NCBI GenBank assembly: GCA_044892505.1
Contig: CM097884.1
Location: 125,302,001-125,366,000 of the forward strand
Direction: 5' to 3'
Length of the DNA: 64,000 nt
Source of the DNA: Schmidtea nova
Lineage: Eukaryota
Part shown: piece after piece, positions 1,646 through 43,197 of the stretch
Layout of the letters: each line of letters begins with the position of its first letter
Numbering within the stretch: the first letter of the stretch is position 1
Made by a program: the position numbers and the translations under genes
Notes under the pieces: model-generated
Told to the model about the DNA's origin: nothing
What the model saw: only the letters and a program-made list of their open reading frames with translations
Databases searched by the model: none

Positions 1646-3443
1646 TTAATTAGTTGAATTTATATCAGCTTTTTATTATTAATAATATTATTGTAGTAAT
1701 TAATTTAAGTATAACGCATAATAAATTAAATAATAAATTAATTAATAATAATAATTAATAATAATTAATAAATTAAATATAAATTAATTAAATATACAGC
1801 GCACGGACCGATAAAATAAACCATTTTAGTGGATTAAAAATAATTATTAAATTATTTATTTTACGGTCCGTAGTAAAGGTATAAATACCGATGCAAAATC
1901 TAAAATCATTGCGTGTTTTCATCAAAGGTTAATTCGGAGCGAACTTAAAATCCGAGCAGACAAAAAAATTCGACAAGTAATTTAGCATTTACAACACAAG
2001 TAAGCAACACAACAATCTAACAAACAACGGCACGCACTTAATAGAATATTTAAGCAATTTAATTAGAATCTTTAATCAGTGTGAAAACTATTATACGATT
2101 TCTAAGTAAATTTCATTTAATAAATTTGTAAAAGACTTTGTTCTACCTTTACTATAAATCTATAAATATATATACGTTAAGAATCTCACTAAGTATCGAG
2201 ACCTAGATAGAGATAAATAACCATCGAAAAGCAGCAACGAAAGAACGAAGAAATAAAATATTAACAATGAAAAAGTGTGCAAGTAGCGAAACACGAAATC
2301 ACAACCCAAAGTTTAGGAAAAAAAGTTAATTACGAAGTAATTGAAAAACTAAAAAGTTTGTAAAAGAAAGATGTATTATAAAGCCACGAATGAAAATTTA
2401 CAAGGTGTGAACTGTTTAAATTACCTTTTGGATAAAGAAGTCCAAATATCCGGAACATTGATAGAAGTGTTTAATAAATGGGGTAGAGTTAGAGACTTGT
2501 TTGTCCCAGTGGAAGATTATAGACTAGGCCTCAATAAATATTTCCTAAACATTTACGCGGACTATAAGGGAACATATGAGAAAAATAATCATCTCAATTC
2601 AGTCAAATCAAAACAATCCGAATCCCAAACCCAAACCCAATTTATATCAATTTCATTCAAGACAATATTTAATTGACTTATTAGGGTTTTTATTTTTTAT
2701 TGTATATTTTATATGAACTTGAATTTTATATTTTTATGTGACAGATTAGCTATTATTATTATTAACACTCAAATTGATTTTGATTTTTACCTTAAATGAG
2801 TCTCGGCTCATTTATACCCAATTCCTCATTACTCAGTATGAGTGTTAATAAATTATATAATATTATAAAAGGTTAATTAACAATTACATTTGGTAATTTA
2901 GTTTTAAGTTAATGATAATGATCAAATTTTATAATTTCCGTTGAACGTCCGTAACTTTTGTATGACTATTATATATTTTTTTAATTTTAAGTAATTTTGT
3001 ATTAATTAATATTTTTAAGTAATTTATAAATAAATTTTATAGTTAATTACAATTATAATTTAAAATAATCATATAAATAAAATATAAAACTTGATCTATG
3101 ACTTATTATTAAAATTTTGTGGGTAAATCACGAGATTTTTCACGAGTTACAGCTAGTATATATATATAATAACATATTTTAATATAAAAAGTAGAGTAAA
3201 ATTTACTCAAACCACCTAAAACAAAAACTCAACTTTATAGTACGATAGAGTAAATCTCGAAAGGACTTAAATAAAGAACAAGACACGACAAAAACTTTTC
3301 GAAAACAATAAATACAGGTCTATATCGAAATCCCTATATATGAAATGTTAGTGGAATTTTTATTTTCATAATTTCAAAAATATTCATTTTTCCAAATATT
3401 TTTTTGCAGAATTAAATCCACTTAAAATATAACAGATATAAAA

Positions 3444-4090
3444 ATGACAAAATTAAATGCATCAAAACCAGAACATCTGGACGTTTCCTACGAAATATGC
3501 TTTTTTTCATTTCGAAAAATGCGTCAGGAGATAAATTCAAACATGTGGATAGTATTGAAGTACACTAATGGCAAAAAAATTAATCTGTGGCTGCAGCATT
3601 GGTTTGCTTTGGAATTTCTTCTAGGAAAATATTTCAGCATCTTATTACATTTTGTGACCTTATTTACCAACAGATGCTGAACCTGTGATCGATTGATTTG
3701 AGAGTAATTACGTAGTCTGAAGAATACGAAAATACATAAACGATATACCAATTCGCGGTCCACCATTATTCCTTCCAACATTACGATCAGTTTTTGATTC
3801 AGTGGAATTGGGGATTCCACGCACTAAAAACGTATTTTGAAATTGCTTAGAATTATTGTAGAATTTCAACAACATATAAAAATTCAGATTGAATGCATTT
3901 TTCATGAACCAGTAAAGAGAAAACGAAGGGACATCGCACGAAAATAGAATTTTGACGGTGATAAAGAACCGACAAAACAAAACAATTGTGTTTTAAACTA
4001 TTATAATGCAACAGTATGAACTATTATGTGAAGATAATTCATAAATAGATGACCGGCAAAACAGAACAACCATGAATTATTTTCACGAAA
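3444..4090 (+). pseudogene. Degenerate Mutator-like (MULE) transposase fragment
   Basis: Across frameshifts reads CFFHFEKCVRR (CxFH motif), ALEFL and PPLFLPTLRSVFDSVELGIPRTKNVFE, matching the MULE C-terminal PPLFPPxxW...PRTNN..E pattern; several stops. Confidence 0.7.
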
Positions 4091-5076
4091 TAGATCAGTG
4101 TTTTATTGTATTTTTTAAAAATTAAAATAAATATTTTATTGTATGATAATTATTATTTATTTTCAAATATAAGTAAAATCAGCTAAAATAATTGTGATTT
4201 TAATTCTGTCCGGATTAAGAATGTCAGGACTTTAATACTCTTAAGAACTTCATTGTCGAAATTTTAATCTGCACAAAGTAACAATAGTGATCACCGTAAG
4301 ATTCAAAAAAACTAGAGTAAGAGAAACAAATACCAAACCCCCAATCAAATGTTCATAAAACAACAATTATAATAGTCTGTTAAAAAACCATTAATATCCT
4401 ATGAACTAAAGAAACATGATTTTAAGAGTATTCTTTACTTAACTATTAATTGAAAAAAAAATTATTTTAAAGTAGGGGGTTGTAAATAAAACTGATCCGA
4501 ATGTTTAACGTTGGTTAGAAACTGGAGTATCGACAGTTAGTTTAATTTAATTGCAGGCATAGCCGTAGTAAAAGCACAAAAAAGACTTTACCTCAAAATG
4601 ATTGAAAAAAATAATAAAACATTTAACCAAAACTATTTTAAAAAATTATGCATTGCAAATATGATAACGCGAAAAACATAAATATTGCAAAGAAACTCTC
4701 GATGATTTTAGGTAATCAATTAAAAGATACTTAAAAGTTTAAAAAAATACTTTAAAAAATTATGTCGAATGAACTGGTAAAAGATTTAGAAAATTTTTTA
4801 TTTGTATCGTTTCTTTTTTTGTTACAAATTGATATTTGTGTGAATACAAATTTGATATTTGTTGCAAATTTAACAAACAATAAAAAGCAGCATTGATTTG
4901 AAAAAGGATCAGCAGTATCTGGAATATATTCTAGTACTAGTTGATCAAGCAAATAAAAGATAATTTTTTTAAATAAAATCAATTATAAAGTTAATTAAAA
5001 GTAAAAATAATTCTTTGATGAAGCATGCAAAGATCGAAGAAAAATTATGTAAATATTTTTAACAAAATCTATTAAA

Positions 5077-5916
5077 TTAATTTTCTAAATTAGCAGTAGT
5101 CCATCTGCGTTTTTTAGTAGGTCGACTTTTTCCAAAATGAATTTTCAAATGTGCTTGAATATTTGTGTAAATTATCGATGATTGGCCGATATAGGAGAAT
5201 TTTATCTTTTTTTCTTTGCCGTCTTCTTTTTCACAGAGTCGACATACATATGTTCCGAAAACTTTATCATTCGTCTCTTCATTAAACCAATCTTCCAATG
5301 CGAAATCTTTTCCTCTTTCAAGTTGCATATCTGGAAATTTTGAAATAGTATTTCTCAAAACTTTTTCATAGGCACTTTCTGGAGCGTCGTATTTGTAAAA
5401 CTGTTCTGTGTTGCTTGCTTTTCCAGCATTGCTAGAATTTGATGCGTTAACATTAAGAGGTAGATCATTAGTTTCGTCAACTTCTTCGAATTTTTGAGGG
5501 AAAATAGTTTTATTGGAACTCAGCCGTTTGAATATCTCATTTTTATTAGGCTTCATGTCTGCTTTATCGTTTCGTTTTTTCGAAATGGTATTTTCAAATT
5601 GTTTTACCGAATGAGAAATTGTTTTGATTAATTTCACACGAAAAATCGGAGAAAACATAAAATACAAAGGGAAATCCGCGAATTCATTTCCGATGATTTG
5701 AGCGCGTTCCTCAGCTGGCATTGTAGACAATCGATTTTGTACATATTTTTCTATTAGATCCACAGAATGATCGGAAAATCTGTGAAAATGTTCGATCTCA
5801 CAATAACCACATAATTTCAATATCGGCGCGATGTATTGAGATTGAGTAGATTGAACTATTGAATCAAGAAATTCTTGGAACATTTTAATGAAATAATTTA
5901 TTGAAAATTCAAACAA
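5077..5916 (-). CDS. Uncharacterised 279-aa protein with C-terminal C2H2/BED-like zinc finger and basic NLS-like tail; possibly a transposon accessory gene
   Basis: Uninterrupted 840-nt ORF in very AT-rich DNA; CRLC...HLKIH motif; ends RPTKKRRW. Confidence 0.55.
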   Translation of the reverse strand: MFEFSINYFIKMFQEFLDSIVQSTQSQYIAPILKLCGYCEIEHFHRFSDHSVDLIEKYVQNRLSTMPAEERAQIIGNEFADFPLYFMFSPIFRVKLIKTISHSVKQFENTISKKRNDKADMKPNKNEIFKRLSSNKTIFPQKFEEVDETNDLPLNVNASNSSNAGKASNTEQFYKYDAPESAYEKVLRNTISKFPDMQLERGKDFALEDWFNEETNDKVFGTYVCRLCEKEDGKEKKIKFSYIGQSSIIYTNIQAHLKIHFGKSRPTKKRRWTTANLEN

Positions 5917-8900
5917 TTTATTTTATAATTAAGTTTTAAAATTAATAATATTAATTATAAAATTAATATTTTATAAATTTGAAATTTGAATTGACTATTT
6001 GAAAAATAACAATTATAATTTATTATTTTCATATTTTTATTATTTTATTTCAAGAAATTAAAGTAAAAATTGTTGCCAAAATAATTATGAAAAAAAATGT
6101 TAATAAATATTATTGTTACAAATAATTCATTGTTTCTAAATAATTATATATATTTTGATTTAGTATTAACAATGGAAAAATAAAAAAATACTACTGTAAC
6201 TATTAAATTTTTTTATTTTTTTTCTTTTTCATATTTTCATGTTTTTAAAATGTGTTTAATTTTTGAAATTTATTAACTCGAATAATATAACTTACCTTTT
6301 TCATAAATTTTTATATTGAATTAAATAAAATAATTATATAAATTTTAATAGTAATTAAATTTCTTATAATTTTGATAGATATTTAAAAAATATTTTCAAT
6401 TTATTTAATAAGGAAACATTCATTAAGAATGTCCTTAGCAAACAAGTATTTTGTTACCACCAACCCCACTTGTTTCTTTATGTCTTTTATGCGAAACATC
6501 TAACTCTGAAGGACGTTCCACGAAAATTTACATTCCTTATTTTCAGTAGAATTGCATTGAGTTTATAGGTTTGTAAATTTTTTTGTATATAATATTGTTT
6601 AAAATATTTAGTAAAAATTGTTCCAATTAAAAAAGATGACCCATTTTTTTCAGAACAAAATTATATATGAAAATAAAACATCTGTCTTTTTAATTACTAA
6701 ATTATTGCAGTCGGTTTCTAAATGTTGCTCATTCTCTCATTAAGAGAACTGAGAAAATAGTATTCAAATAAGAAGGCGTTGGGTAATAAATAAATCTCTG
6801 ACAGAAAATAATAGTAAAATATTAAAAAGGAATCTGTGGTAATTGTATTTTCTTGCAAATGACAAATTGAATAATAATCTGTAATTTTATATTAGGATTT
6901 TAATGAAAATGTAAATTGTAACTAAAAGTGCAGCTGTAGATAAGCACTTCCTTAATGTTCCATATTTCCTTTTTGTGGAGACATTTCTCTCCCTTCTTAG
7001 AATTTGGTTGCACAATTAAATGCTCATCAATTTATTTAGTTATAAAACTGATGCAAATTCGTTGTGATAAAGTAATAGAAATTTGCGATATATTTTCAAT
7101 CCACCTCAATAAATTCGTATTTTACAAATTCTTAATCGATTTTATGGTTTGTACTCGAAATCCTTCCTTGTTAACCGAAATATTTTATCAAAACGTTTCT
7201 AAAATAACACTTTTAAGACGTCTGAACTTATGCATATTCTATATTTTATAGTAATTCGTAGTTTTATATTCGTCATCAAATATCCTGTGTGTATATGTTT
7301 TCAAGCATTCACAAAATAATATTCACTAATCGACAATAAATTTAATTTATTTCTAATTATTTTAATTAGAGTTATTGAGACAAAAATAAACAATTTTTAT
7401 TGATGAGTATATATAATAATTTTTAATCTTTGGATAAAAAGATGAAATTTTAGATTAACTAACATTTCTTTTATAAAATTGAGTTTAATCTATTACTTTT
7501 AATAATATAGAACTGGGATCATTCTTTCTTTTTTTTGTTTCTTTAAAAAATCAGTAAAGTAATCACTTAGCAATCACTTAGCAATCACTTATTTGAGATT
7601 AAAGATCTTTAGCTTGTCAAAAGTTAAATATTGTATTCTATTTTACAATAATTGGAAAGATAAATAAATTTTTAATTAATTAGTTTGTATTTTTGTATTT
7701 ACACTTATTTAAAATTATTTGATATGTATTTATTTTTTAATAACCATCTATTTCCAATTTTTTGCTTAGTAATTCAATAAATTATTTCTTTTTGGTGCTA
7801 TAATTCATTTAATGTTCCCCATTAATTTATGAGTATTTCACATTATTTTTTGTAACCCAAGCATATTTCATTTCATCTCAAATTCAAAATGACAAATACT
7901 AAATTGATGTATAAACATTCATATAATACCTAAGTGCCAAATTCAGTATTATTTATAGACATATTCTATTTATTTAACAAATGCAGTTTTAACAAACACA
8001 CCATTAATATTTCTTCTTCAAATTCTTGCAACAATAGATTTTAAAATAGAGCATTGCTATTATTAGAAAAGGTTGGTCAACGTATTGGTCAACAAAACAT
8101 GGATCATTTTCTTTAGTTAAAACTAGAAGTTCGATATTTGTCAAGTAATCAAATTTTATTGACACCAAAGAGAGTTAGCTGGTACAGATACAAATACATC
8201 GTTCTCAATGTCGTGCATTTAATTTTGAAAATTTAGGTAAATAAGTTATGTATTATTTTAATACCTCTTAGAACTTAATAACATAATCAGCATAAAATTT
8301 AGTAACATGAGAAATTGGATTATAATTTTTGTAAAAACACAATTTTATAAAGATTTGCATGTGCTAAACCTTTTTTTCTTATTTTTTTCGTTTTTTATGA
8401 GGCCTGATAATAAAATCAACAAAGTCTAAACCTCTATATTTTGACTTACGAATTAAAAGAAATTAAAAACCGGAAATAATTAATTATTACAAATATATCA
8501 AAACAGTAATACACAATCCGAGTATTTTTATTTTTAATGTAAAATCTGACGTTATCATAGATATTGGTAATTTTCAAGGAAAGCAGTAGAACGGGAATGT
8601 TGTCATAAATTCAATGTAGAAACAGTGTAATGTCACAGCATACAATTCAAAACACTGATAAACTAGTCAAAAAGCAAATTTTAAATATAAAAAACGTAAC
8701 AGTTACATTAGCAAAGAATTATTGTATACTAGGTTGTTCTAAGGCACCAAGGCGCCCCCTTAGTCAATTTTTCACTTTTGGCAGTTTCATTTTTTAGTAT
8801 TAAATAATTGAAAAAAAATAAATGTCCATCTTCAATCTTGATTTTGACATTTTTTGCGTTTCTTGATCTTGATCCTGTATATCCAAGATCAATATGGTCA

Positions 8901-10553: not shown

Positions 10554-11099
10554 GAATGAATTCAAATAGAAAGGCACACGTTATGACTAGCCGTTTTCTT
10601 AAATCTCTTCGACAGGAAAATACCGAGCTAAAGAGTGTCCTCGCCAGACAAACCCGAGAAGTCAAGGATTTACGCAAGACTTGATTTGCACCACAGGAAA
10701 AGAAGAAATGTCTCCAAAGTATCGAGCGACTCCAGCGAGCTCTTGATGAACTACACTAGATCTCACTGCTATCCGCTGCAAATTAAATGCCGACCTGAAT
10801 TATGTCACTCAGACCTATGTAGATCATCGGTTTCGGGCTAAGATTCGCCAAATAACACGCGAAAAATGTGACACTCGCCATTGAAACTCAGACGGAAGAT
10901 ACGAGGATCACTCCATTCATGTCAACATCTGTAGCCACTACAATCAGTGGGAAGACCAAAATACGGAACCGCATGGGAGCTAGGTGCCGAAGAGAGCAAC
11001 GGGTCTATGCTGAAAAATTAAACATACAAGTGGATTGGCTCAGTGAGCTAACCGAACGACAATTAGTAGACACTATTGACTACACTGTGTTATCTAAAT
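10554..11099 (+). pseudogene. Coiled-coil/Arg-rich orphan ORF family, copy A (disrupted; 3' end split by a hAT MITE)
   Basis: KIRNRMGARCRREQRVYAEKLNIQVDWLSELTERQLV aligns with copy B KRRNRLGAKRRRERRAYAEKLGIEVDFLSGLSEKQLI. Removing the MITE restores a TAA stop (11551-11553) inside AATAAATGTGTT, as in copy B. Confidence 0.7.
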
Positions 11100-11543
11100 C
11101 AGAGGTTCCCAAACTTCTTTGTCTCTGGACCCACTTGGAAATATTTTTGACATCTCGGGAACCACTGAATAAAATTAAGCATCGAGTACTCAGTAATATC
11201 TCATAAATTGGGTTAAAATATTCCGATTTACAGACAGCGTTTAGAAACTTTAGAAATTAGCACATTTAAAACATAAAAATGAAACTTAGAAAAACAGTAA
11301 AAAATTTATTTCAATGCAAAAGCAACAGTTTTAACAGTGTTATAACAGTTTAACTAATATTTATACAAGTAGAAGCTAGTTATAGCCCAATCATGGTCAA
11401 ATGTTGTTGTTCCGCTAGTTATACCGGAATAAAGTATGAAATTTGCGGGTTACTGAAATAAAAGACGAAAAAAGTTATGTTTTCCTAAAAACTTTCGCGA
11501 CCCACTTGCCAGAGCTTGGCGACCCACAGTTTGGGAACCTCTG
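11100..11543. mobile_element. Non-autonomous hAT MITE (Charlie/Buster-type ends)
   Basis: 16-bp TIR CAGAGGTTCCCAAACT at both ends; perfect 8-bp TSD ATCTAAAT. Confidence 0.9.
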
Positions 11544-11645: not shown

Positions 11646-11812
11646 GGGACCATGAGGTTTAGGATGAATAGTAATAGGGTCTTCTATCGGCCCAGGACTC
11701 AAGCATATGAAAGAGAAGAATAGTGACCCCCAGGTCGCTCACCTGTTCTCTTGGTATGCACTGTATGGTACAGTACCAAAACGAGGTGGTGCTAGAGACA
11801 TTCCATGGGTAC
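11646..11812 (+). ncRNA. Conserved multi-hairpin motif, copy A (candidate structured RNA)
   Basis: GGGAC ... GGGTC-TTCTATC-GGCCC hairpin ... GTGACC-CCCA-GGTCGC hairpin ... long hairpin CACCT..TTGGT..ACTGTA-TGG-TACAGT-ACCAA..AGGTG ... CATGGGTAC; related to copies at 17776, 18850 and 41009. Confidence 0.5.
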
Positions 11813-12503
11813 CATAGCGGATGATAACTCTTTTTATGTTGGTATGTTTTGACCCTAGACGAATATCATCAAATCCAAATGAAATAACAACCAATACACC
11901 AGCACAATTCACACGATAAAGTATATTTTAGTTACCCAATAAACAAATATTTTAAACCCGGTAACTCTCAGGAATACAAAAATGAACAGAATTCAAAATT
12001 ATTTTATAATTTTACAGTTACCGGTTTTCGTTGAAATCAACACCCATTGAATATAGGAAATTGGTTTTATTTTCAATTTTTTTTTCAATTTTTATATATA
12101 TATATATATATATACAAAGGGCGCATATCGTCAAAGGCCTACATAGGAAAAGATTTTCTCATTTAATTCAGAAAGTATTATGGAAATTCAAGACACAAAT
12201 ATTGTGAAATCTTTTCGAGTCTCTGATTTACCTCAAAATGGTATAAAATTGAAGTCATGCTAAAATGCATTTTTTTATTCTTCTAATGTGTAGAACTTTT
12301 ATTTAATTGACAATAATGATGTTGATAGATATCGATGTTGATTGAAACGTTGATTCTATATAAAATTTAGAGCAAATAAATTTTATTTATTAGTTTTAAT
12401 TAGTCTTATTTTCAATTTTGGTAAAACCCTGTACGACTTGAAATGTGGACCATGTTCTTATTATCGTTAGGTCTTATTTTAAATTTTTTTCGTTTGTAAA
12501 ACC

Positions 12504-16920: not shown

Positions 16921-17775
16921 TTTTAATATAAACAACAAAAATAATTTGTTTAGTGAAGCAAACTTTTAAAACAATCTTGCGGATGAACCTCCGGCCATTC
17001 TCTTACATCTACGTAAGTATGAGGCTGGACTTCAATGTCGCGTTGACAGCATGGGGATAGATAATTTAAGAGTTCACTATAAACTCGGGAACCAACACTG
17101 GCATACCTGCATCTCAACAAGCTGGAGATACTCGCAGCGAGTTAGAAATTCGGAAGATCACGAAAAAATACAAAAAAATAATGTAAATACATATTGATTT
17201 TCATCTTTGATTGATAACACATCGAATCCTTATTGAATACTAATTGAACTATTGAACCAATAAATGATGAGAAGCCATTTTTACAGCATTTAATTAAATT
17301 GACGCAGTAAAACAAAAGCATCTAGAATGCTTTTATTATTGTTTTTAACTTATTTTTTTTTAAATTATCTTATTTTTACCAGAATAAATTTATTTTTATA
17401 CATAAAATTTTAGTCATTACTTTATTAAATTTTATTTTTATTAAAATTTTATATTTTACATAAATTTTAACAACTTTAATTTTTATTTTTACAATTTACT
17501 TTTACATTTTTCATATTTAAACTATCATAATTAAGATTATTAATTATAAAATTCTGATTTTTATTATTACCTAATTTTTTAATGAATTTTTTGTTAATGT
17601 GTTTTCGTGTGTTTTCTACTCTTGTTTATTTAAAATTTTTATTTTTGTTTAAAAATGTTTGTCTGAGATACTAATTATTTCTTGCTGGTGTGAAACTTTG
17701 TAAATTATTACAATTCATTTCAGCTTTAGGGGATATTGTCATGGTCACCCTTATAAATGCATCCTTAACGATTGT

Positions 17776-17909
17776 GTACCCATGAGACCCCTTTATTCTC
17801 GTGTTGGTGCTGTACACCACAGCGTAGATCAAGCCGGCAGGTGAGCGGACTAGGAGGCAACGACTCCAGGCTTGTCTCTTTTACGGGCTCTTCTTTGTCG
17901 ATATAAGAC
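17776..17909 (-). ncRNA. Conserved multi-hairpin motif, copy C
   Basis: GTC-TTATATC-GAC hairpin ... GCTCACCTG ... GCTGT-GGTGT-ACAGC-ACCAACACGAG ... CATGGGTAC on the minus strand. Confidence 0.5.
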
Positions 17910-18344
17910 TGTAATAGTCAACAGAGTAATGCTATAAATAGTAAATATAATAGTTATGGGAAATTTCAATGTAAGTTGTTGTTAATAGGTAATTATTATT
18001 TGGGGTTGTAACAAATGATGAATGTAAATAAGTGTGTGTTAATGAGGAGGAAGATTGAAGAGCCCAACAGAGTTTCCTGTAAAATTTGTATTGGGACTGT
18101 TAGGGTGCTTGTTATGTATATTTAGATTTGTGATGGCGGGCTGGTATATGTGTTAAAAACAACAAATAATGAAAAAATTAAATAACAAACTTTATTTATA
18201 AAATAAGAATAAAATTAACTACTCATGTGCCCAAACCGTAAAACGTAATAAAAATTGAATATTTACAAAGACCATCTATATATCCTCTCACGTCCCATAG
18301 TCAGTCTTCATTTATTAGGGACTTCTGTTTCTCATAACCTAATG

Positions 18345-18800
18345 CTAATTTTTATTGATATCACTACAACACGACATTAAAAAGGGGATGACCTCTGATA
18401 TTAGGTCTATTTCGGTGAGGGAGTCCAGGTGTGACACCTGTGTTGTCAATTGTCGCGCGAATTTCCTTTGTTGCTGGAGAGGCCATTGCCTGGAACTCAT
18501 TATGTTTTGACTCGCTTTCGGTATCAGAACATCGGGTGTTTTGGCTGTAGTTTCCTTGCCACCGATTTTGTCTTTCATTTGCTTTTATTAAGGGTTTATT
18601 TTTAGATCTAGTTAGCTTTGTCCTGATCTGCTTGATGCTTAATTTGTAATTTTTATTCATTTATTTACTTTTTAAGTTCTCTGGTCTTTTCAAAAGTTTG
18701 CTCAAATTTTTTTAAGTTTACTTATTGTGCAGTCTTTACATGATATGTCCTTGCTCGCTTTCAAATTAATTGGATTTAGTTTTTGATCGTCAATATGACC
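18345..18800 (-). pseudogene. Coiled-coil/Arg-rich orphan ORF family, copy C (most diverged)
   Basis: QQRKFARQLTTQVSHLDSLTEIDLI aligns with EQRVYAEKLNIQVDWLSELTERQLV (copy A); the upstream part is coiled-coil-like with stops. Confidence 0.5.
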
Positions 18801-18849
18801 TTGACGTTGTTATGCCTCACATCAACAACTCAACATACAAATCATTAGA

Positions 18850-19010
18850 GTAACCATCTTGTTGCCGTCACAATCTAACGTTTGGTAATGCCACAAATGG
18901 GTGGATGTCCACAAACAGTGAGCGTCTAAAAAAATCGAAACTATGATTGACCGAACATTACAATGGGTTCAAGGACTACCGATAGAAGGTCTAATGCACA
19001 TTTGAGTCCC
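18850..19010 (-). ncRNA. Conserved multi-hairpin motif, copy D
   Basis: GGGACT...ACC-TTCTATC-GGT-AGTCCT ... GCTCACTG-TTTG...CCAC-CCATTT-GTGG...CCAAACG ... ATGGTTAC; shares CCTTCTATCGGTAGT with copy B. Confidence 0.5.
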
Positions 19011-19113
19011 TTATTTAACAATTGATCTGCAAGCATTCAATAAAATTTATAGAATCAATATTTACTAATAACAACCATTAATTTACCTTTATTATATAAA
19101 ATAAAACTATATA

Positions 19114-28271: not shown

Positions 28272-30648
28272 TAGGGTTGATCTTTTACCGATTATTTACC
28301 GATTTATCGGTATATTTTTTTCCGTTTTATCGGTAAATTATAATATTAATTTCGAAATTAATTTTTTTTTATTAATTTCCAAGTGTGCGTCATTAACAAA
28401 TTATTAATTGTTAATTACATTTTTTATTAGATTGTTTTAATTACAAACAAAAATGTTTTGCTACAAATTGTTATGTTTTTTTTAATTAATTGTTAATAAA
28501 TGACATAATTTTTTTTCAATAATTAGTTTTGTCTCAGCACTCATTAGAAGAAGATATATTTGTGATTATATTAAAAACGAAAATAGTAATTGAACATTTA
28601 TTTTAAATTTGAGAGCTCTTAGCAAAATGTCAGAGGCTTGGAAATATTTCAGAAAAGACACAAGTGATGGCGTCAGTGTTTGCAATATTTGTGGTTCAAA
28701 AATTCAGTACACAAGCTCTACGACTGGAATGTGGTATCACCTTCGAAAAAAACACGGGAAATCAATTGAAAAACAAGCTAAAGAAACAACAAAAATCTCT
28801 GCAGCTTCAGGAATCAAATCTGCATCAAAAATCTCATCTTTTTTCAAGAAAGAATCAATTGGAGAGGTTATTTCCAAACTGACAGCATTGGATGGATTTA
28901 GTTTCAATGGATTAGTTAATAGTTCATTTGTTCGAGCAGCCATGCTAGAAAAAGGGTTGGAATTTCCAAAAAACCACAGACAAGCAATTCAATTAGTAAA
29001 AACTTTTGCCAGTTGCATGCAGAATGAAATGAAAACTAAATTTCTTTCAATGATATCAAGTGGTCAACAGTTTTCAATTATTTTGGATGAATACACTTCC
29101 TTAAAAAATCGAAGGTTCATCAATGTCAATGTTCATCAAAAGAATAAGCACTGGAATCTTGGACTGAAAAGAATTTCTGGGTCTCTTCCTGCCGAGAAAG
29201 CAGTTGAAATTGTAACAGAAAAACTTGAAGAATTTGGGATGAACATTGTTGATCAAATTGTTTGCTCTGTCACTGATGGGGCTTCTGTGATGGTAAAGTT
29301 TGGAAAATTGATTCCTACTGGACATCAAACATGCTATTCACATGCCATTCATTTGGCCGTTCAGGAAGTATTGTATGAGAAACCTGCCAAAAAAGCACAA
29401 ACCCAAAGCAACAGCTTGGAAGAGGAAGAGGAAGATATTGCGAAAGAAAATAATATAAGTGATGAAGATGAAAATAGTGATGACTCTGATGATGAGGATA
29501 GCACTGGTCTTCTTGACAACTGCATAAATGAAAGCATTTCCATTCCAAAAGTTAAAATGAACTTTCAGTCTATCATCACCAAAATTAGAAAAATTGTCAA
29601 GCTATTTCGAAAGTCACCAGTAAAAAATGATGTACTTCAAGAAGAAGTAAAGAAACAACATGGAAAAGAAGTTTCACTTATCATTGATTGCAGAACAAGG
29701 TGGAACAGTTTATTATCAATGATTCAACAGTTTCTAAAAATTAAAGATTCCATAACAAAAGTATTAACGGATATTTCACCACATTTAATTTGCAGTGAAG
29801 ATGAATTTGATATTTTAGCAGACATTGTTGCAGCTCTTGAACCAGTTAAATTGGCTGCTGAGGCACTTTGCAGACAAGATGCAACTCTCTTAACGGCCGA
29901 AGGGATCTTTAAGTTTCTTGTGAACAATTTAAAGCATAAGAAATCAAACCTTTGTATTTTGATGAAAGATGCTATTTTGAGACGATTTGCTGAAAGAAGA
30001 CAAACTAATTTGGTTAGTTTATACAAATACCTCTCAAATCCAGAATGTCTTTACCAGGTTGAAGAGCATGACGTTTTCAATATGCCATCAAAATCTATAC
30101 TTCAAAAGACTGCTAAAAACATGCTATCCAGATTGTTCCCAACCTTAGAAATTGAAAATGATAATCACGTGAACTGTAGCACAGATAATGAGACTAAAAA
30201 AGAGGAACAGCTACTATCACTTCAAGATGAGCTAGAAGAGGCTATCAAACATTCTGCAAAAAAACAAAGACATAACTCACATGATGAGTTCAAGGCAATT
30301 TCAAAAGAAATGCAAGTCTTTGAAGCAACTGGAAAGAGGACACCAAATCTTGAACTTTTGTTCAATGCTCTTGAAACTATTCCTCCAACAAGTGTAGAGT
30401 CAGAACGTGCATTTTCTGCAGCTGGACTATTTGTTACAAAAATAAGATCACGAATGAGTGATGACCTTCTTGATACGTTGTGTTTTCTTAAAGCATATTT
30501 TTTAATGAAAAATAAATCTTGAAATTGCTCTTATTTCTATTTGAATGCTTTATAAATTTTTTTACCGATTTTACCGATTATATCGGTAAATTGTTGGATT
30601 TTTATCGTTTTATCGGTAAATTTAAAACTCGGTAAAAGATCAACCCTA
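28272..30648 (+). mobile_element. Full-length autonomous hAT DNA transposon
   Basis: 20-bp TIR TAGGGTTGATCTTTTACCGA; perfect 8-bp TSD ATAAATAC; subterminal TTACCGAT/ATCGGTAA repeats; single intact ORF. Confidence 0.95.
28627..30522 (+). CDS. hAT transposase with N-terminal BED zinc finger (631 aa from ATG)
   Basis: W..F...CNIC...TT.M..HL..H (BED), LDEYTS, VTDGASVM, CYSHAIHL (CxxH), TRWNS, ESERAFS. Confidence 0.93.
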   Translation: MSEAWKYFRKDTSDGVSVCNICGSKIQYTSSTTGMWYHLRKKHGKSIEKQAKETTKISAASGIKSASKISSFFKKESIGEVISKLTALDGFSFNGLVNSSFVRAAMLEKGLEFPKNHRQAIQLVKTFASCMQNEMKTKFLSMISSGQQFSIILDEYTSLKNRRFINVNVHQKNKHWNLGLKRISGSLPAEKAVEIVTEKLEEFGMNIVDQIVCSVTDGASVMVKFGKLIPTGHQTCYSHAIHLAVQEVLYEKPAKKAQTQSNSLEEEEEDIAKENNISDEDENSDDSDDEDSTGLLDNCINESISIPKVKMNFQSIITKIRKIVKLFRKSPVKNDVLQEEVKKQHGKEVSLIIDCRTRWNSLLSMIQQFLKIKDSITKVLTDISPHLICSEDEFDILADIVAALEPVKLAAEALCRQDATLLTAEGIFKFLVNNLKHKKSNLCILMKDAILRRFAERRQTNLVSLYKYLSNPECLYQVEEHDVFNMPSKSILQKTAKNMLSRLFPTLEIENDNHVNCSTDNETKKEEQLLSLQDELEEAIKHSAKKQRHNSHDEFKAISKEMQVFEATGKRTPNLELLFNALETIPPTSVESERAFSAAGLFVTKIRSRMSDDLLDTLCFLKAYFLMKNKS

Positions 30649-39428: not shown

Positions 39429-40100
39429 GTGATGCGTGATGATGATCCCAAAACTACGAATGTCTATAATAGCATTATTCAGATCATGTCAAATATAAAA
39501 TCGCGCCAGCAACGATACCAGCCCCTGAAGGCGATATTCACTGATGCAAATACGACTCCGGAACGAATCAAGAAATCGGCCGAATGCCATCTTCGGGCGC
39601 GGAAGCGTCACCATGTGGATGCCGATGTGCGAGCAATGGCGTTTCCCGATAATCTTCGAATCCGATGGGAAGGAGACCCATCGTGCCCGGTATCTCCGGA
39701 CACTATGACCGAAACACGAGAGAAATGGTTCCTTCAATTTGAGGACGAGCAGGCCATGCCCCGGTGGATCCTCACGTTCAACCCCATATCCGGCTAGAAG
39801 CTTCGACAGCTAGGCTACATATTATTAGATCGGCCAAGGTGCATCTGCACAGGAGAACTCCTAACCTACACCAATACTCCCGGAAATAGGGACATGGATC
39901 AACGCCAGTGGAACCGCGGAGTACAGATGTGGGAGGTATTTATTTTCCAGGGTGAACTGTGTTGGAATCCATGCCCATAACTATACCAGGAAGATGGAAA
40001 AGGACGAGCCGAGCCGAGCGAGAATACGATCAGGATTTGGTCGAATTTTGATAAACACCTGACAATGGATGAAGTGATCGACATATTTTATCATAAATAA
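39429..40100 (+). pseudogene. Unidentified GC-richer coding-like segment upstream of orphan ORF copy B
   Basis: 122-aa ORF followed by further open stretches in shifted frames (DQRQWNRGVQMWEVFIFQGELCWNPCP). Confidence 0.35.
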
Positions 40101-40298
40101 ATGAGTGTTTTGTTACATTGTTTTATGCCTGAATGTATGTGGTACAAGTGATTGACGTATAGACAAATTGAATGGCGAGTGTGGGGTAAAGAGGGGTTAA
40201 AAAATTGACAATTATGCCAGCGAATGAGCAGGGAATGAGTGAAATATGCGGAATCTATTTTAAAACGAATATACTAACCCCTCCAATTTTCCTTTTAG

Positions 40299-40856
40299 AT
40301 GAAGGTAGCGAAGGACCACGAATACAAGGAGGCGAGATTGTCCCGAAAACGAGTAAAAGTCCTCGAGAGTCGCCTAAAACAGTTAGACACCGAGATGACC
40401 CTAATAAAAACAACATGGTTCCATCCGGAACGGGTTAAAACCATCCAACAAGCTAGATATCGGGCGGAAAGGGCATTAGAGGAGCAGACGCGCGAAACAG
40501 CAGCAGTCAAGCTAGAGCTCAGTAACTACTTACACGCCTCCACGAAAGAATTCATTGAGCAGCAGCTGAAGCCTCTCATCCGCACTAGCACATTCAATCG
40601 GTGGGCCAAGTCGACTAGTGTCTCCATGGGAGTGCAAACCGATGCCAATACAAACCCAAGTCCAGATAATCCGGAAATGATTCATCAACGAGAGGGATCG
40701 AAACCTACAAAGAGAAGGAACCGACTAGGTGCCAAGAGACGTCGGGAAAGACGAGCGTACGCCGAGAAGTTGGGGATAGAAGTCGATTTTCTAAGCGGCT
40801 TATCAGAAAAACAATTAATCCATCTGATGCATCCGGAAATGTTATTACCCGAATAA
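40299..40856 (+). CDS. Coiled-coil/Arg-rich orphan ORF family, copy B (intact, 185 aa; possibly a spliced exon)
   Basis: Open frame; preceded by branch point TACTAAC (40272-40278), pyrimidine tract and TAG acceptor (40296-40298); stop lies within AATAAA; homologous to copies A and C. Confidence 0.7.
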   Translation: MKVAKDHEYKEARLSRKRVKVLESRLKQLDTEMTLIKTTWFHPERVKTIQQARYRAERALEEQTRETAAVKLELSNYLHASTKEFIEQQLKPLIRTSTFNRWAKSTSVSMGVQTDANTNPSPDNPEMIHQREGSKPTKRRNRLGAKRRRERRAYAEKLGIEVDFLSGLSEKQLIHLMHPEMLLPE

Positions 40857-41008
40857 ATGTGTTATGTACAAATTGTGTTCTTATGAATGAATGTGGGATG
40901 TATGAGGGTTTAAGTAAATGAACGATTGATAAAATCCAATTCATTGAAAGCCAAAGGACGTAAGGAAAGTAAATCAACCCTAGACGGAGTGAATCTAAAT
41001 AAATGAGG

Positions 41009-41164
41009 GGGACCGGAATAAAACCACACAAACCTTCTATCGGTAGTGGTGGACCCGTGAATAAATAAGGGAATAGTAGCCGCAAGGTTGCTCACCTGCC
41101 TTATCATTTCACAACGTTGATACAGTTCCAACATGATGAGTAGTTAGGGATACATCATGGGTAT
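41009..41164 (+). ncRNA. Conserved multi-hairpin motif, copy B
   Basis: GGGAC ... ACC-TTCTATC-GGT ... GTAGCC-GCAA-GGTTGC (GNRA loop) ... CTCACCTG ... ATCAT..AACGT-TGAT-ACAGTT..ATGAT ... CATGGGTAT. Confidence 0.5.
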
Positions 41165-43197
41165 CAGCGGGGGAAAGCGCGTTTATGTTGGCGAGATTAC
41201 CCTAACCAATGACATCGAGTATAATCTCTGTTGCAAAATCTAAACAACAAACTAGCATTTATCAGATTGTAGAATATTGATAGTAATTATGATTACACAT
41301 AAGTAAATATTTAATAGGGTTTGCTTCAAGGGTACGTATTTTTGGGGGAAAAGTTTTACATTATATTTTTCATAATTAATTCTTAATAGTATTAAAATAA
41401 AACAATTATAGAATTAAAAATAGAATTAGAACAGAAACATCGCTAAACGCACAAAATATTAAAATTTTAATTGCAGAACCGTAGCTAAAATAATAAAAGG
41501 AAATTCTTAGAAAATTACATATTAAAGTTAATAAAAAATTTTAATCCGTATATACTGACTTGGAACAATATTTTCTTCAACATTTGATCGAATTAATCAA
41601 TTTATCTCAATAAATTAAAATTTCATTATGTATTATATTTATCTAAAGATTGCAAGTGTTTTATTAAAAAAGTTAGCTAAGTTTAAAAAGCTCATGTTCA
41701 GAATAGTTTGTAATAATTTTTGCAGTTATTTTTGTGAGCAATAACTAAAAAATTCGACTAAATACAATCCTACTAAACATCAATTCAACTAAAAACAATT
41801 GAACTAATTACAATCATACTAAACTTTTAAATTACAATATACTTTTTAAACATTTTACTTTTTTAAAACTAAAATTTAACTTTGAAATTATAATATTCTG
41901 AACAATTTATAATTTTAAAAAATTGAAAGTTTATAGCAAGAAGTTAACCCATATAAATTTTATCAATTGAAAATGTATTACAAAATTTTAAAAACAAAAA
42001 AAATCAATGATAGTTTATTGTTAAATGAATTCATTTTTACATAAAATGAATTAGAGGTTTTAGTAAAGGGCCTAAAATCAGGTTAAATAATTATATTCAA
42101 CGATTTAGTTAAAATTTAATTAGTTGAATTAAGTTTTAGTCGAATTGTAATTAGTTGAATTGTTTTAGTTAAAAGCTCAGTTTTGAACGATGTAATAAAA
42201 AAATGAAGAAAAAATGACATTAAATATACTAGATGATGATCCTAGATGATGATCCTAGAAATGAAGGACCTAATTTTTAAAAGGAGCCTGTAGTGTTCCT
42301 TGTTCTCACTATATTTCACTTAAAATCTCGTTTTTGTCAGAAATCCAATAATTATTACATCGCTTGAAAATCATTCATTTAGGCAATTTTAAATGAAACT
42401 ACAGTGTAAATTTTAATATTTTATAGCTAAAATTCAAATACTATCGTGTGATGCGACAGTCCAAATTTTATTACAAATAGTAGTTTTAAATTTGAAAACT
42501 ATTTTATTTCTTTCCAAAAAATGTCTGTCTTTCCTTTATTTTTGTCGTTGAAAAATGGTCACTGTAGTCATACATGATTTTAAAGCTGATATGCTCTAGA
42601 AATGTTGTGTCAATGTTGCTGAACCAGTGATATTTAATTTAGACAAAATTAGAAGGCCTTAGAAGAGATGTTTGAAGCTTTAGAAGATTTATTGAGCAAA
42701 AAGTAAAGCAACTTATATGATGAAATATAAAAAGAATTTGAATGTTTTGTCAATTAACATATGGTATGACATTTTATCTACAATTAACAAAATTAGTAAA
42801 AATTAGTAAAAATGAGAAAAATAATAATATACTTATAAGGTTTCATGGGACACTTAAAAATTTGATAGATTATTTAAAATAATTTCAAAATAATTTTTTT
42901 TAAATCAAGATTTGAAATTTGTGAGTTTAAAGAAATAAGATCAAGAAAACGAAGACGTAAATTTGACCATGAAATAACCAACACGTGTACAAATAATTCT
43001 AAAACAAATTTCTTAGAAACAATAGATCAATGAATACTGTCCACAAAAAGATTCTAGCAAATAAAGAAACATGGTTTAACTCTAGGTTTCCTTTATAATG
43101 GTCCTTCACCAATAATGATAGACGACAAAGATCTAAATTACTTCAATGAAATCATAACTCCCCATTTTCTAAGATTTTTTTTTCTTTTTCTAAGCCC

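What the first reader, a model, noticed from the sequence alone, without database searches (positions are those of the whole stretch)
11646..11812. Four-copy multi-hairpin motif with compensatory changes: candidate new structured RNA or ribozyme
Seen at 11646-11812 (+), 17776-17909 (-), 18850-19010 (-) and 41009-41164 (+). Hairpin 1 keeps the loop TT(C/A)TATC while its stem changes (GTC/GGC, ACC/GGT, GTC/GAC). Hairpin 2 is GTGACC/GGTCGC in A and GTAGCC-GCAA-GGTTGC in B. The inner stem of hairpin 3 is ACTGT/ACAGT (A), GCTGT/ACAGC (C), AAC-GT/ACAGTT (B). Fixed blocks are GGGAC, GCTCAC and ATGG(G/T)TA. Inference: pairing is conserved despite low identity, as expected for a functional RNA or ssDNA structure. 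The 3-bp stem with 7-nt loop resembles P3/L3 of HDV-like ribozymes, but I could not complete that fold. A decayed exon (AHL....L..T.P.R...WV) is the alternative.
Basis: partly seen in the sequence, partly recalled or inferred. Interest (0 to 1): 0.75.

Follow-up and report, generated by a model that had tools for sequence, protein, structure and literature searches.

The report
Conserved RNA tail of jumping genes
The "four-copy motif" is the conserved, folded 3' tail of a very abundant family of retrotransposon-like repeats in an AT-rich animal genome: the RNA structure is real, but it is a mobile-element part, not a new ribozyme or a gene exon.

Summary
All four copies exist where stated. A covariance model scores them at E 1e-34 to 5e-8. 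They are not a four-copy family: the model gets about 164,000 first-look candidates genome-wide, and all 150 scored are significant.

The motif lies 60-85 nt upstream of a sharp non-poly(A) 3' end (...ACCAGCA) of interspersed elements. These elements are truncated at the 5' end, and the three full-length copies found have 5-6 bp target duplications. Family B is about 3.3 kb with two orphan ORFs and no reverse transcriptase. ORFb is under purifying selection (dN/dS 0.06-0.25, dS often above 1). In the same copies the motif core is 94-98% identical.

Covariation supports three helices and a small hairpin with loop UUCUAUC (79.7% paired against 65.7% when shuffled). Rfam has no match and no reading frame is open.

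Best reading: a cis-acting RNA tail recognised by a retrotransposition machinery supplied in trans. The partner enzyme was not found. APE-type LINEs are nearly absent. Seven Penelope-like and five non-LTR 3' ends sampled lack the motif. I did not find this family noted earlier in the scan.

The parts
11646..11902 (+). Copy A: 3' tail domain of a family-A element. The model core is 11674-11821 and the element's 3' end (...ACACCAGCA) is at about 11902.
   Evidence: R2 hit at 149.6 bits. Family-A genomic copies align to 11675-11900 and stop there.
11677..11693 (+). H1 in copy A: GGGTC / loop TTCTATC / GGCCC.
   Evidence: Sequence. The inner 3 pairs covary: GC/AU/GU, UA/CG/UG.
11711..11752 (+). 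H2b (11711-11717 with 11746-11752) encloses H2 (GTGACC 11723-11728 with GGTCGC 11733-11738). The conserved internal-loop block GCTCACCTG is at 11737-11745.
   Evidence: At one H2b position the pairs are AU 19, UA 11, GU 6, UG 4, CG 2, GC 1.
11780..11807 (+). H4 in copy A (11780-11786 with 11801-11807). It is degenerate in this copy (4 of 7 pairs) but intact in most relatives.
10856..11206 (+). Remnant of ORFb (coiled-coil plus basic C-terminus) upstream of copy A.
   Evidence: 41% identity over 80 aa to ORFb of copy B, E 2e-10. The same ORF recurs upstream of the motif in family-A loci.
39433..41258 (+). Copy B: the 3' 1.8 kb of a family-B element. Weaker homology reaches back to about 38562. 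Full-length relatives are about 3.3 kb.
39429..39797 (+). ORFa fragment (RSAE.HLRA...WFLQFEDEQAMPRWIL), an orphan protein.
   Evidence: No Pfam match. No credible relative among 1.84 billion representatives.
40299..40856 (+). ORFb, intact, 185 aa: coiled coil, then KRRNRLGAKRRRERRAYAEKLGIEVDFLSGLSEKQL.
   Evidence: dN/dS 0.06-0.25 among 7 intact copies. No Pfam match and no relatives.
41009..41258 (+). Copy B: 3' tail domain. The core is 41027-41173. H2b is 41065-41070 with 41099-41104. H2 is 41076-41081 with 41086-41091 (GCAA loop). H4 is 41132-41138 with 41153-41159. The 3' end reads ...AACTAGCA.
17705..17914 (-). Copy C: a 5'-truncated family-C element consisting of the tail only. The core is 17767-17914.
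   Evidence: The upstream 80 nt belong to a different repeat.
18779..19048 (-). Copy D: a 5'-truncated family-D element. The core is 18841-18995.
   Evidence: Two longer family-D copies share at least 1 kb more upstream, including internal tandem repeats and no long ORF.

Best explanation
The motif is the core (about 150 nt) of a roughly 250-nt conserved 3'-terminal domain carried by a superfamily of interspersed retroposon-like elements. At least four families, A to D, are represented in this window. The elements are copied through a sense-strand RNA and inserted from their 3' end.

Shown: the position of the motif in the elements, its abundance, 5' truncation, short target duplications in three full-length copies, absence of a reverse transcriptase in the full-length family-B unit, purifying selection on ORFb, extreme conservation of the core, and covariation in helices H1, H2b, H2 and H4.

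Inferred: the folded tail, with its invariant unpaired blocks (UUCUAUC loop, GCUCACCUG internal loop, AUGGGUACCAUAGCGG), is the cis-acting platform that a trans-supplied reverse transcriptase/endonuclease must bind to start copying at the nearby 3' end. The element's own ORFa/ORFb proteins may also bind it. Under this reading every lineage, coding (A, B) or non-coding (D), has to keep the tail. This is the same logic as the shared 3' tails of stringent-type LINE/SINE pairs and the R2 3' UTR.
For: - Position: the core ends 62-84 nt before a sharp common 3' end (...ACCAGCA, no poly(A)) in 29 of 29 family-B copies. Families A, C and D have the same layout.
- Retroposon hallmarks: 5' truncations occur at many different points. 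Three full-length 3.3-kb copies share the 5' end (G)TTGGGCCAGG and are flanked by 5-6 bp duplications: CAAATG, AAAGT, ATATT.
- Abundance: about 164,000 first-look candidates, with all 150 scored significant. Summed contig depth on 41000-41207 is about 6,000-10,000 times single-copy depth, against tens of times on the ORFs.
- Constraint: among 7 copies with intact ORFb, dS is 0.5 to above 2 and dN/dS is 0.06-0.25. In those copies 41028-41178 is 94-98% identical, against about 73% for the ORF.
- Structure on a plain MAFFT alignment: 77.9% of cells paired, against 73.6% shuffled and 34-38% with partners slid. Double-change cells number 66 against 35.7 (0 of 500 shuffles).
- Structure on the model-fitted alignment of 52 distinct sequences: 79.7% paired against 65.7%, 239 double-change cells against 97.5, covariation score 0.451 against 0.212.
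- Strand: many G.U pairs (for example UG 36, GU 14-16) favour the sense strand.
- Linkage: the motif sits downstream of ORFb in families A and B and in a further diverged family (L064:3411-3555 after L064:3752-4309).
- Known precedent: 3' tail stem-loops recognised by LINE proteins (PMC4176376, PMC1636434).
Against: - No reverse-transcriptase-bearing element with this tail was found. The tail is absent from a 3.1-kb Penelope-like tandem unit, from 6 other GIY-YIG 3' ends and from 5 non-LTR-type 3' regions. These are only small samples.
- APE-endonuclease LINEs, the usual partners for such tails, are nearly absent (PF14529: 0 hits; PF03372: 3 hits).
- The target-duplication evidence rests on three copies.
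- Predicted folding energy is not unusual (z -1.0).
- The near-identity of the family-B core could reflect recent tail swapping or recombination rather than selection.
- No RNA data were available, so transcription, RNA ends and binding are untested.
Confidence: 0.62

Rival explanations
1. The tail is mainly the packaging or RNP-assembly site for the element's own ORFa/ORFb proteins (gag/ORF1-like chaperones). Non-coding family-D elements would hitch-hike on those proteins. Recognition by the reverse transcriptase would lie elsewhere, for example in the last 60-80 nt.
For: ORFb has a coiled coil plus a strongly basic C-terminus and is under purifying selection. ORFa is also conserved across lineages. 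The motif is tightly linked to ORFb in three families. The core is more conserved than the terminal 50 nt.
Against: No fold or homology evidence shows that ORFa or ORFb binds RNA (pLDDT 42; no Pfam match). This rival is not exclusive of the best explanation.
Confidence: 0.15
2. The motif is a self-cleaving ribozyme, HDV-like or of a new class, that processes the element's transcript.
For: A 3-bp stem with a 7-nt U/C-rich loop resembles P3/L3. Copy D can form a 7-bp P1 (AGGGACU/AGUCCUU) immediately after P3. Sequence conservation is very strong in unpaired blocks.
Against: P1 is not conserved in families A, B and C (longest runs 2-5 bp, within shuffled controls). There is no Rfam ribozyme match at E<=10. 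The motif lies in the 3' UTR, not at the element's 5' end. I saw no excess of copies starting at the motif: the loose ends at 41009 look like diverged upstream sequence.
Confidence: 0.06
3. The motif is a 3'-end formation or stability element for a non-polyadenylated RNA, protecting the end or directing its processing, with no role in reverse transcription.
For: The elements lack poly(A) and have a precise conserved 3' end. The structured domain lies close to that end.
Against: This would not by itself explain why unrelated element bodies (family B coding, family D tandem-repeat non-coding) all carry the same module and amplify to tens of thousands of copies. No triple-helix or tRNA-like signal was found.
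Confidence: 0.08
4. The motif is a decayed protein-coding exon. This covers the reader's frame AHL...WV, or an exon on the opposite strand ending at CAG|GTGAGC.
For: GCTCACCTG is the reverse complement of a consensus 5' splice site. One weak local peptide match links A and C.
Against: All six frames have 2.1-2.8 stops per core on average, and at most 2 of 30 sequences are open in any frame. Variability shows no triplet periodicity (0.19/0.19/0.16). Indels shift frames between families. The motif lies downstream of the ORFb stop codon in intact elements.
Confidence: 0.01
5. The motif is a DNA-level signal: a single-stranded DNA structure or recombinase site of a DNA transposon such as a Helitron or Crypton-like element.
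For: The element has a conserved 3' end with hairpins and encodes no reverse transcriptase.
Against: There are no terminal inverted repeats, no CTRR end and no fixed T after the 3' end. Target duplications are short and variable. 5' truncation is frequent. G.U pairs are strand-specific. No Rep/helicase or tyrosine-recombinase ORF is present.
Confidence: 0.03

Closest known systems
Shared 3' tails of stringent-type LINE/SINE pairs (eel UnaL2/UnaSINE1, zebrafish ZfL2; PMC1636434, PMC4176376)
   Same: A conserved stem-loop domain sits close to the 3' end of retroposon RNA. It is kept by otherwise unrelated non-autonomous elements and matters in both sequence and structure. The copies show 5' truncation.
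   Different: This domain is larger (about 150-250 nt, with several helices). It does not end in short tandem repeats or poly(A). No partner LINE with the same tail was found. APE-type LINEs are almost absent from this genome.
R2 retrotransposon 3' UTR RNA (Rfam RF00524)
   Same: A structured 3' UTR of about 200-250 nt, without poly(A), that the element's protein binds to start target-primed reverse transcription. Structure is conserved more than sequence between lineages.
   Different: There is no Rfam match. These insertions are dispersed with AT-rich, unrelated flanks, not site-specific. The 5 non-LTR-type 3' regions sampled lack the motif.
Protein-coding non-LTR elements without a reverse transcriptase (Drosophila HeT-A; mammalian HAL1).
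   Same: The elements keep gag/ORF1-like ORFs under selection but have no reverse transcriptase, so they must use one supplied in trans.
   Different: ORFa and ORFb have no detectable similarity to any known ORF1/gag. The elements have no poly(A) and are not telomeric.
HDV-like self-cleaving ribozymes
   Same: A 3-bp stem with a 7-nt pyrimidine-rich loop, like P3/L3. Such ribozymes occur inside retroposons.
   Different: There is no conserved P1 or P2 and no match to the Rfam HDV-type models. The motif is 3'-terminal rather than 5'-terminal.
Conserved central domains of SINE superfamilies (CORE, V, Deu, Nin-DC, Meta; compare PMC4758252)
   Same: One module is conserved across element families whose other parts are unrelated.
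   Different: No tRNA/5S/7SL-derived head or pol III boxes are present. The module is sub-terminal, and many carriers are 3-kb protein-coding elements.

Membership tests
HDV-like ribozyme | P3 (about 3 bp) closed by a 7-8 nt L3 loop | tested here: met
   GTC/ACC - TTCTATC - GRC/GGT in all four copies and most relatives.
HDV-like ribozyme | A 6-7 bp P1 whose 3' strand directly follows P3, conserved across relatives | tested here: not met
   Only copy D has it (7 bp). Families A, B and C have longest runs of 2-5 bp, not above shuffled controls.
HDV-like ribozyme | Match to curated HDV-type covariance models | tested here: not met
   No Rfam hit at the gathering score or at E<=10.
HDV-like ribozyme | Site-specific self-cleavage | not testable with these tools
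   Needs in vitro transcription.
Stringent-type LINE/SINE 3' tail | Conserved structured domain at the 3' end of a retroposon, with covariation | tested here: met
Stringent-type LINE/SINE 3' tail | The same tail on an autonomous element that encodes a reverse transcriptase | tested here: inconclusive
   Not found in 13 sampled RT-element 3' regions.
Stringent-type LINE/SINE 3' tail | Short tandem repeats or poly(A) at the extreme 3' end | tested here: not met
   The ends read ...ACCA(G/A)CA, followed directly by unrelated flank.
Non-LTR (target-primed) retroposon | Variable 5' truncation with a fixed 3' end | tested here: met
Non-LTR (target-primed) retroposon | Short target-site duplications of variable length, with no LTRs or TIRs | tested here: met
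   5-6 bp duplications in 3 of 3 full-length copies and no terminal repeats. The sample is small.
Non-LTR (target-primed) retroposon | Own reverse-transcriptase ORF | tested here: not met
   The full-length 3.3-kb unit holds only ORFa and ORFb. These elements are therefore non-autonomous.
Penelope-like element | RT plus GIY-YIG ORF upstream of the tail, or a hammerhead motif | tested here: not met
   Seven Penelope-like 3' ends lack the motif. No hammerhead hit in Rfam.
Protein-coding exon | A frame open across copies, with triplet-periodic substitution | tested here: not met
SINE | tRNA/5S/7SL-derived head with a pol III promoter | tested here: not met
   ARAGORN finds no tRNA-like sequence in the window. 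No Rfam small-RNA hit. Short copies are 5'-truncated long elements.

The most novel reading that the evidence does not exclude
The tail is the recognition and priming platform for a non-canonical mobilising enzyme, in a genome that has almost no APE-type LINEs. The enzyme could be a Penelope-like or restriction-like-endonuclease reverse transcriptase, or a so far unrecognised activity that works with the orphan ORFa/ORFb proteins. If so, this would be a new, very successful class of RT-less, two-ORF retroelements (tens of thousands of copies) defined by this RNA module.
Probability: 0.2. Interest if true: 0.65.

Novelty: new member of a known kind. Interest (0 to 1): 0.4.

Why it matters
The motif marks one of the most abundant repeat superfamilies of this 1.25-Gb genome, at roughly one copy per 5-20 kb. 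A covariance model of it gives a compact handle for annotating those repeats, which carry no Pfam-recognisable protein.

The biology is also unusual. Elements whose ORF synonymous sites are saturated keep a 150-nt RNA core almost unchanged. They encode two selected orphan proteins but no reverse transcriptase. The genome lacks the usual APE-type LINE partners. Finding which enzyme reads this tail would show how non-autonomous retroelements are mobilised in this lineage.

Tried and rejected
- Rfam at gathering score and at E<=10: no match.
- tRNA scan of the window: none.
- Opposite-strand exon ending at CAG|GTGAGC: rejected by stop codons and frame shifts.
- HDV-like P1 search: not conserved.
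- Folding-energy z-scores: about -1, uninformative.
- ORFb: no Pfam match, no word-search relatives, Atlas hits below 0.8.
- ORFa: no Pfam match. Of 1.84 billion representatives, a profile search gave one hit. That hit is a tandem-repeat protein whose score comes from 10 weak repeats, so I treat it as spurious.
- AlphaFold2 model of ORFa: pLDDT 42, unusable, so no fold search was run.
- Exact-protein contig look-up for ORFb: not on record.
- Sequencing runs: the four holders are DNA contigs and no RNA run was found.
- Automated target-duplication search at 15 'homology start' points: no signal, because those points are lineage divergence, not truncation.
- Search for the partner enzyme: a gypsy element, a Penelope-like tandem unit, 6 GIY-YIG 3' ends and 5 non-LTR-type 3' regions all lack the motif.
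- Literature search by motif words: only chance primer matches.
- I built no full-length consensus of any element.

Full report
**Context.** The window is AT-rich (about 27% GC) animal nuclear DNA. It holds BEL/Pao, gypsy and hAT elements and no tRNA genes. It lies on the third of three very large chromosomes of a 1.25-Gb assembly.

**Observation.** Plain blastn does not link them, and mean column identity is 59%. A covariance model built from relatives recovers exactly these four sites in the window, at E 7e-34 (A), 7e-20 (B), 4e-19 (C) and 5e-8 (D), and nothing else. Chance is excluded.

**Not four copies.**
- DNA searches of the whole assembly give 66 first-look candidates for the A type, 1876 for B, 51 for C and 4131 for D.
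- The model gives about 164,000 first-look candidates, and all 150 scored have E<=2e-15.
- Public DNA contigs laid on copy B show summed depth on 41000-41207 of roughly 6,000-10,000 times the single-copy level, against tens of times on the neighbouring ORFs. This is a rough figure, not a copy number.

**What carries the motif.**
- All 29 family-B copies examined end at the same base (...AACCAACAAACCAGCA). There is no poly(A) or microsatellite, and the flanks are unrelated and AT-rich.
- The motif core ends 62-84 nt before that end in families A to D.
- Upstream, copies break off at many different points. For example, the window's copy D (270 nt) lacks at least 730 nt that two other family-D copies share.
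- Three family-B copies share a 5' terminus, (G)TTGGGCCAGGCAAATCA, about 3.3 kb from the 3' end. They are flanked by 5-6 bp direct repeats.
- There are no LTRs or TIRs, no Helitron-type end and no fixed target.
- Together these are the hallmarks of target-primed retroposition through a sense RNA. The target-duplication evidence rests on only three copies.

**Coding content.**
- Family-B elements carry ORFa (about 200 aa or more) and ORFb (185 aa: a coiled coil followed by a very basic segment).
- ORFb also lies upstream of copy A (41% identity), in family-A loci, and before a more diverged motif in L064.
- Among seven intact family-B ORFb copies, dN/dS is 0.06-0.25 and dS is 0.5 to saturation. 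These are old lineages of a functional gene.
- Neither protein has a Pfam family or a credible relative in the large protein libraries. A model of ORFa was of low confidence.
- The 3.3-kb unit contains no reverse transcriptase.
- Family-D elements have internal tandem repeats and no long ORF.

**Constraint on the motif.** In the same seven copies, mean pairwise identity is about 73% over ORFb and 67-79% in the proximal 3' UTR. It is 94-98% over 41028-41178, then 86-89% towards the end. This means either strong selection on the nucleotide sequence or repeated homogenisation of tails. Both imply that the tail is what matters for propagation.

**Structure.**
- RNAalifold alone finds little, and single-sequence energies are ordinary (z about -1).
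- Inspection of 30 sequences from several lineages shows four elements:
  - H1: 3-5 bp with loop UUCUAUC.
  - H2b: AAGNGAA/UUCNCUU. It encloses H2 and leaves GCUCACCUG as an internal loop.
  - H2: GUGACC/GGUCGC.
  - H4: CGUGGGG/UUCCACG in family A, CAUGAUG/CAUCAUG in B, CACGAGA/UCUCAUG in C.
- On a plain MAFFT alignment 77.9% of cells pair, against 73.6% after shuffling and 34-38% when partners are slid. Double-change cells number 66 against 35.7 (0 of 500 shuffles).
- On a model-fitted alignment of 52 distinct sequences the figures are 79.7% against 65.7%, and 239 against 97.5 double-change cells. H2b, H2 and H4 pair at 85-89% with up to six pair types per position. This alignment leans towards the model, and relatedness inflates such tests.
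- The between-family compensations in H2, H2b and H4 do not depend on that fitted alignment.
- Frequent G.U pairs favour the sense strand.

**Alternatives.**
- Coding is excluded.
- The HDV-like idea fails on P1 conservation and on Rfam.
- Hammerhead and other ribozyme families give no hit.

**Who mobilises them?**
- APE-type endonuclease domains are essentially absent.
- GIY-YIG (Penelope-like) elements are abundant, with 3406 candidates that often lie in tandem or inverted arrays and ORFs of about 855 aa.
- Non-LTR-type reverse transcriptases with ORFs of about 1009 aa also exist. Some form arrays on small contigs, which agrees with earlier scan notes of site-specific elements with a restriction-like endonuclease.
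- None of the 13 RT-element 3' regions I could fetch carries the motif.
- The partner remains unknown. This is the main gap in the explanation.

**Verdict.** The finding is a real, covarying RNA structure, but it is a cis-acting tail of a very abundant non-autonomous retroelement superfamily. It is a new member of a known kind, not a new ribozyme or a gene.

Noticed in passing
G000 genome-wide; L071:237-2801 and 3373-5937: APE-endonuclease LINE domains are almost absent (PF14529: 0 hits; PF03372: 3 hits). GIY-YIG gives 3406 candidates. One sampled Penelope-like element is a perfect 3,136-bp tandem with intact 854-aa ORFs, and many copies lie in inverted pairs 1-3 kb apart.
   Followed up: partly
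L062:1137-3959 (-): An open 941-aa frame matches the Monjiviricetes viral fusion glycoprotein family (PF24664, E 2e-84). This is either an endogenous viral envelope-like gene or the env of a retroelement.
   Followed up: no
L068+L067 (C2:331407300-331412000) positions about 1029-2868; L069: Family-D elements contain a long internal array of tandem repeats, with units of roughly 75-150 nt, upstream of the conserved tail. They have no long ORF.
   Followed up: partly
L069:135-279 (+) and L069:401-554 (-): Two motif-bearing copies lie tail-to-tail, with their 3' ends abutting within about 20 nt. This may be nested insertion or a target preference for the tail itself.
   Followed up: no
window 28609-30522 (+): An intact 637-aa hAT transposase ORF with BED zinc finger and hAT dimerisation domains.
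   Followed up: no
L066:4267-6065 (+); L063:6303-8768 (+): A run of three adjacent open frames in L066 looks like a transposase; I did not scan it. The 822-aa ORF in L063 has a weak Endonuclease VII match (E 5e-5).
   Followed up: no
G000 C39, C55, C10 and the first 0.6 Mb of C2: Non-LTR-type RT ORFs (632-1015 aa) recur at regular spacing on small contigs and at a chromosome end. This suggests site-specific insertion into a tandemly repeated target.
   Followed up: no
5' end of full-length family-B copies: L061:6756, L064:6871, L066:6851: The 5' terminus (G)TTGGGCCAGGCA and the 3' terminus ...AACCAGCA share CCAG(G)CA. TGTTGG also recurs about 80 nt before the 3' end. This could be terminal redundancy. 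Two of three junctions carry an extra G.
   Followed up: no
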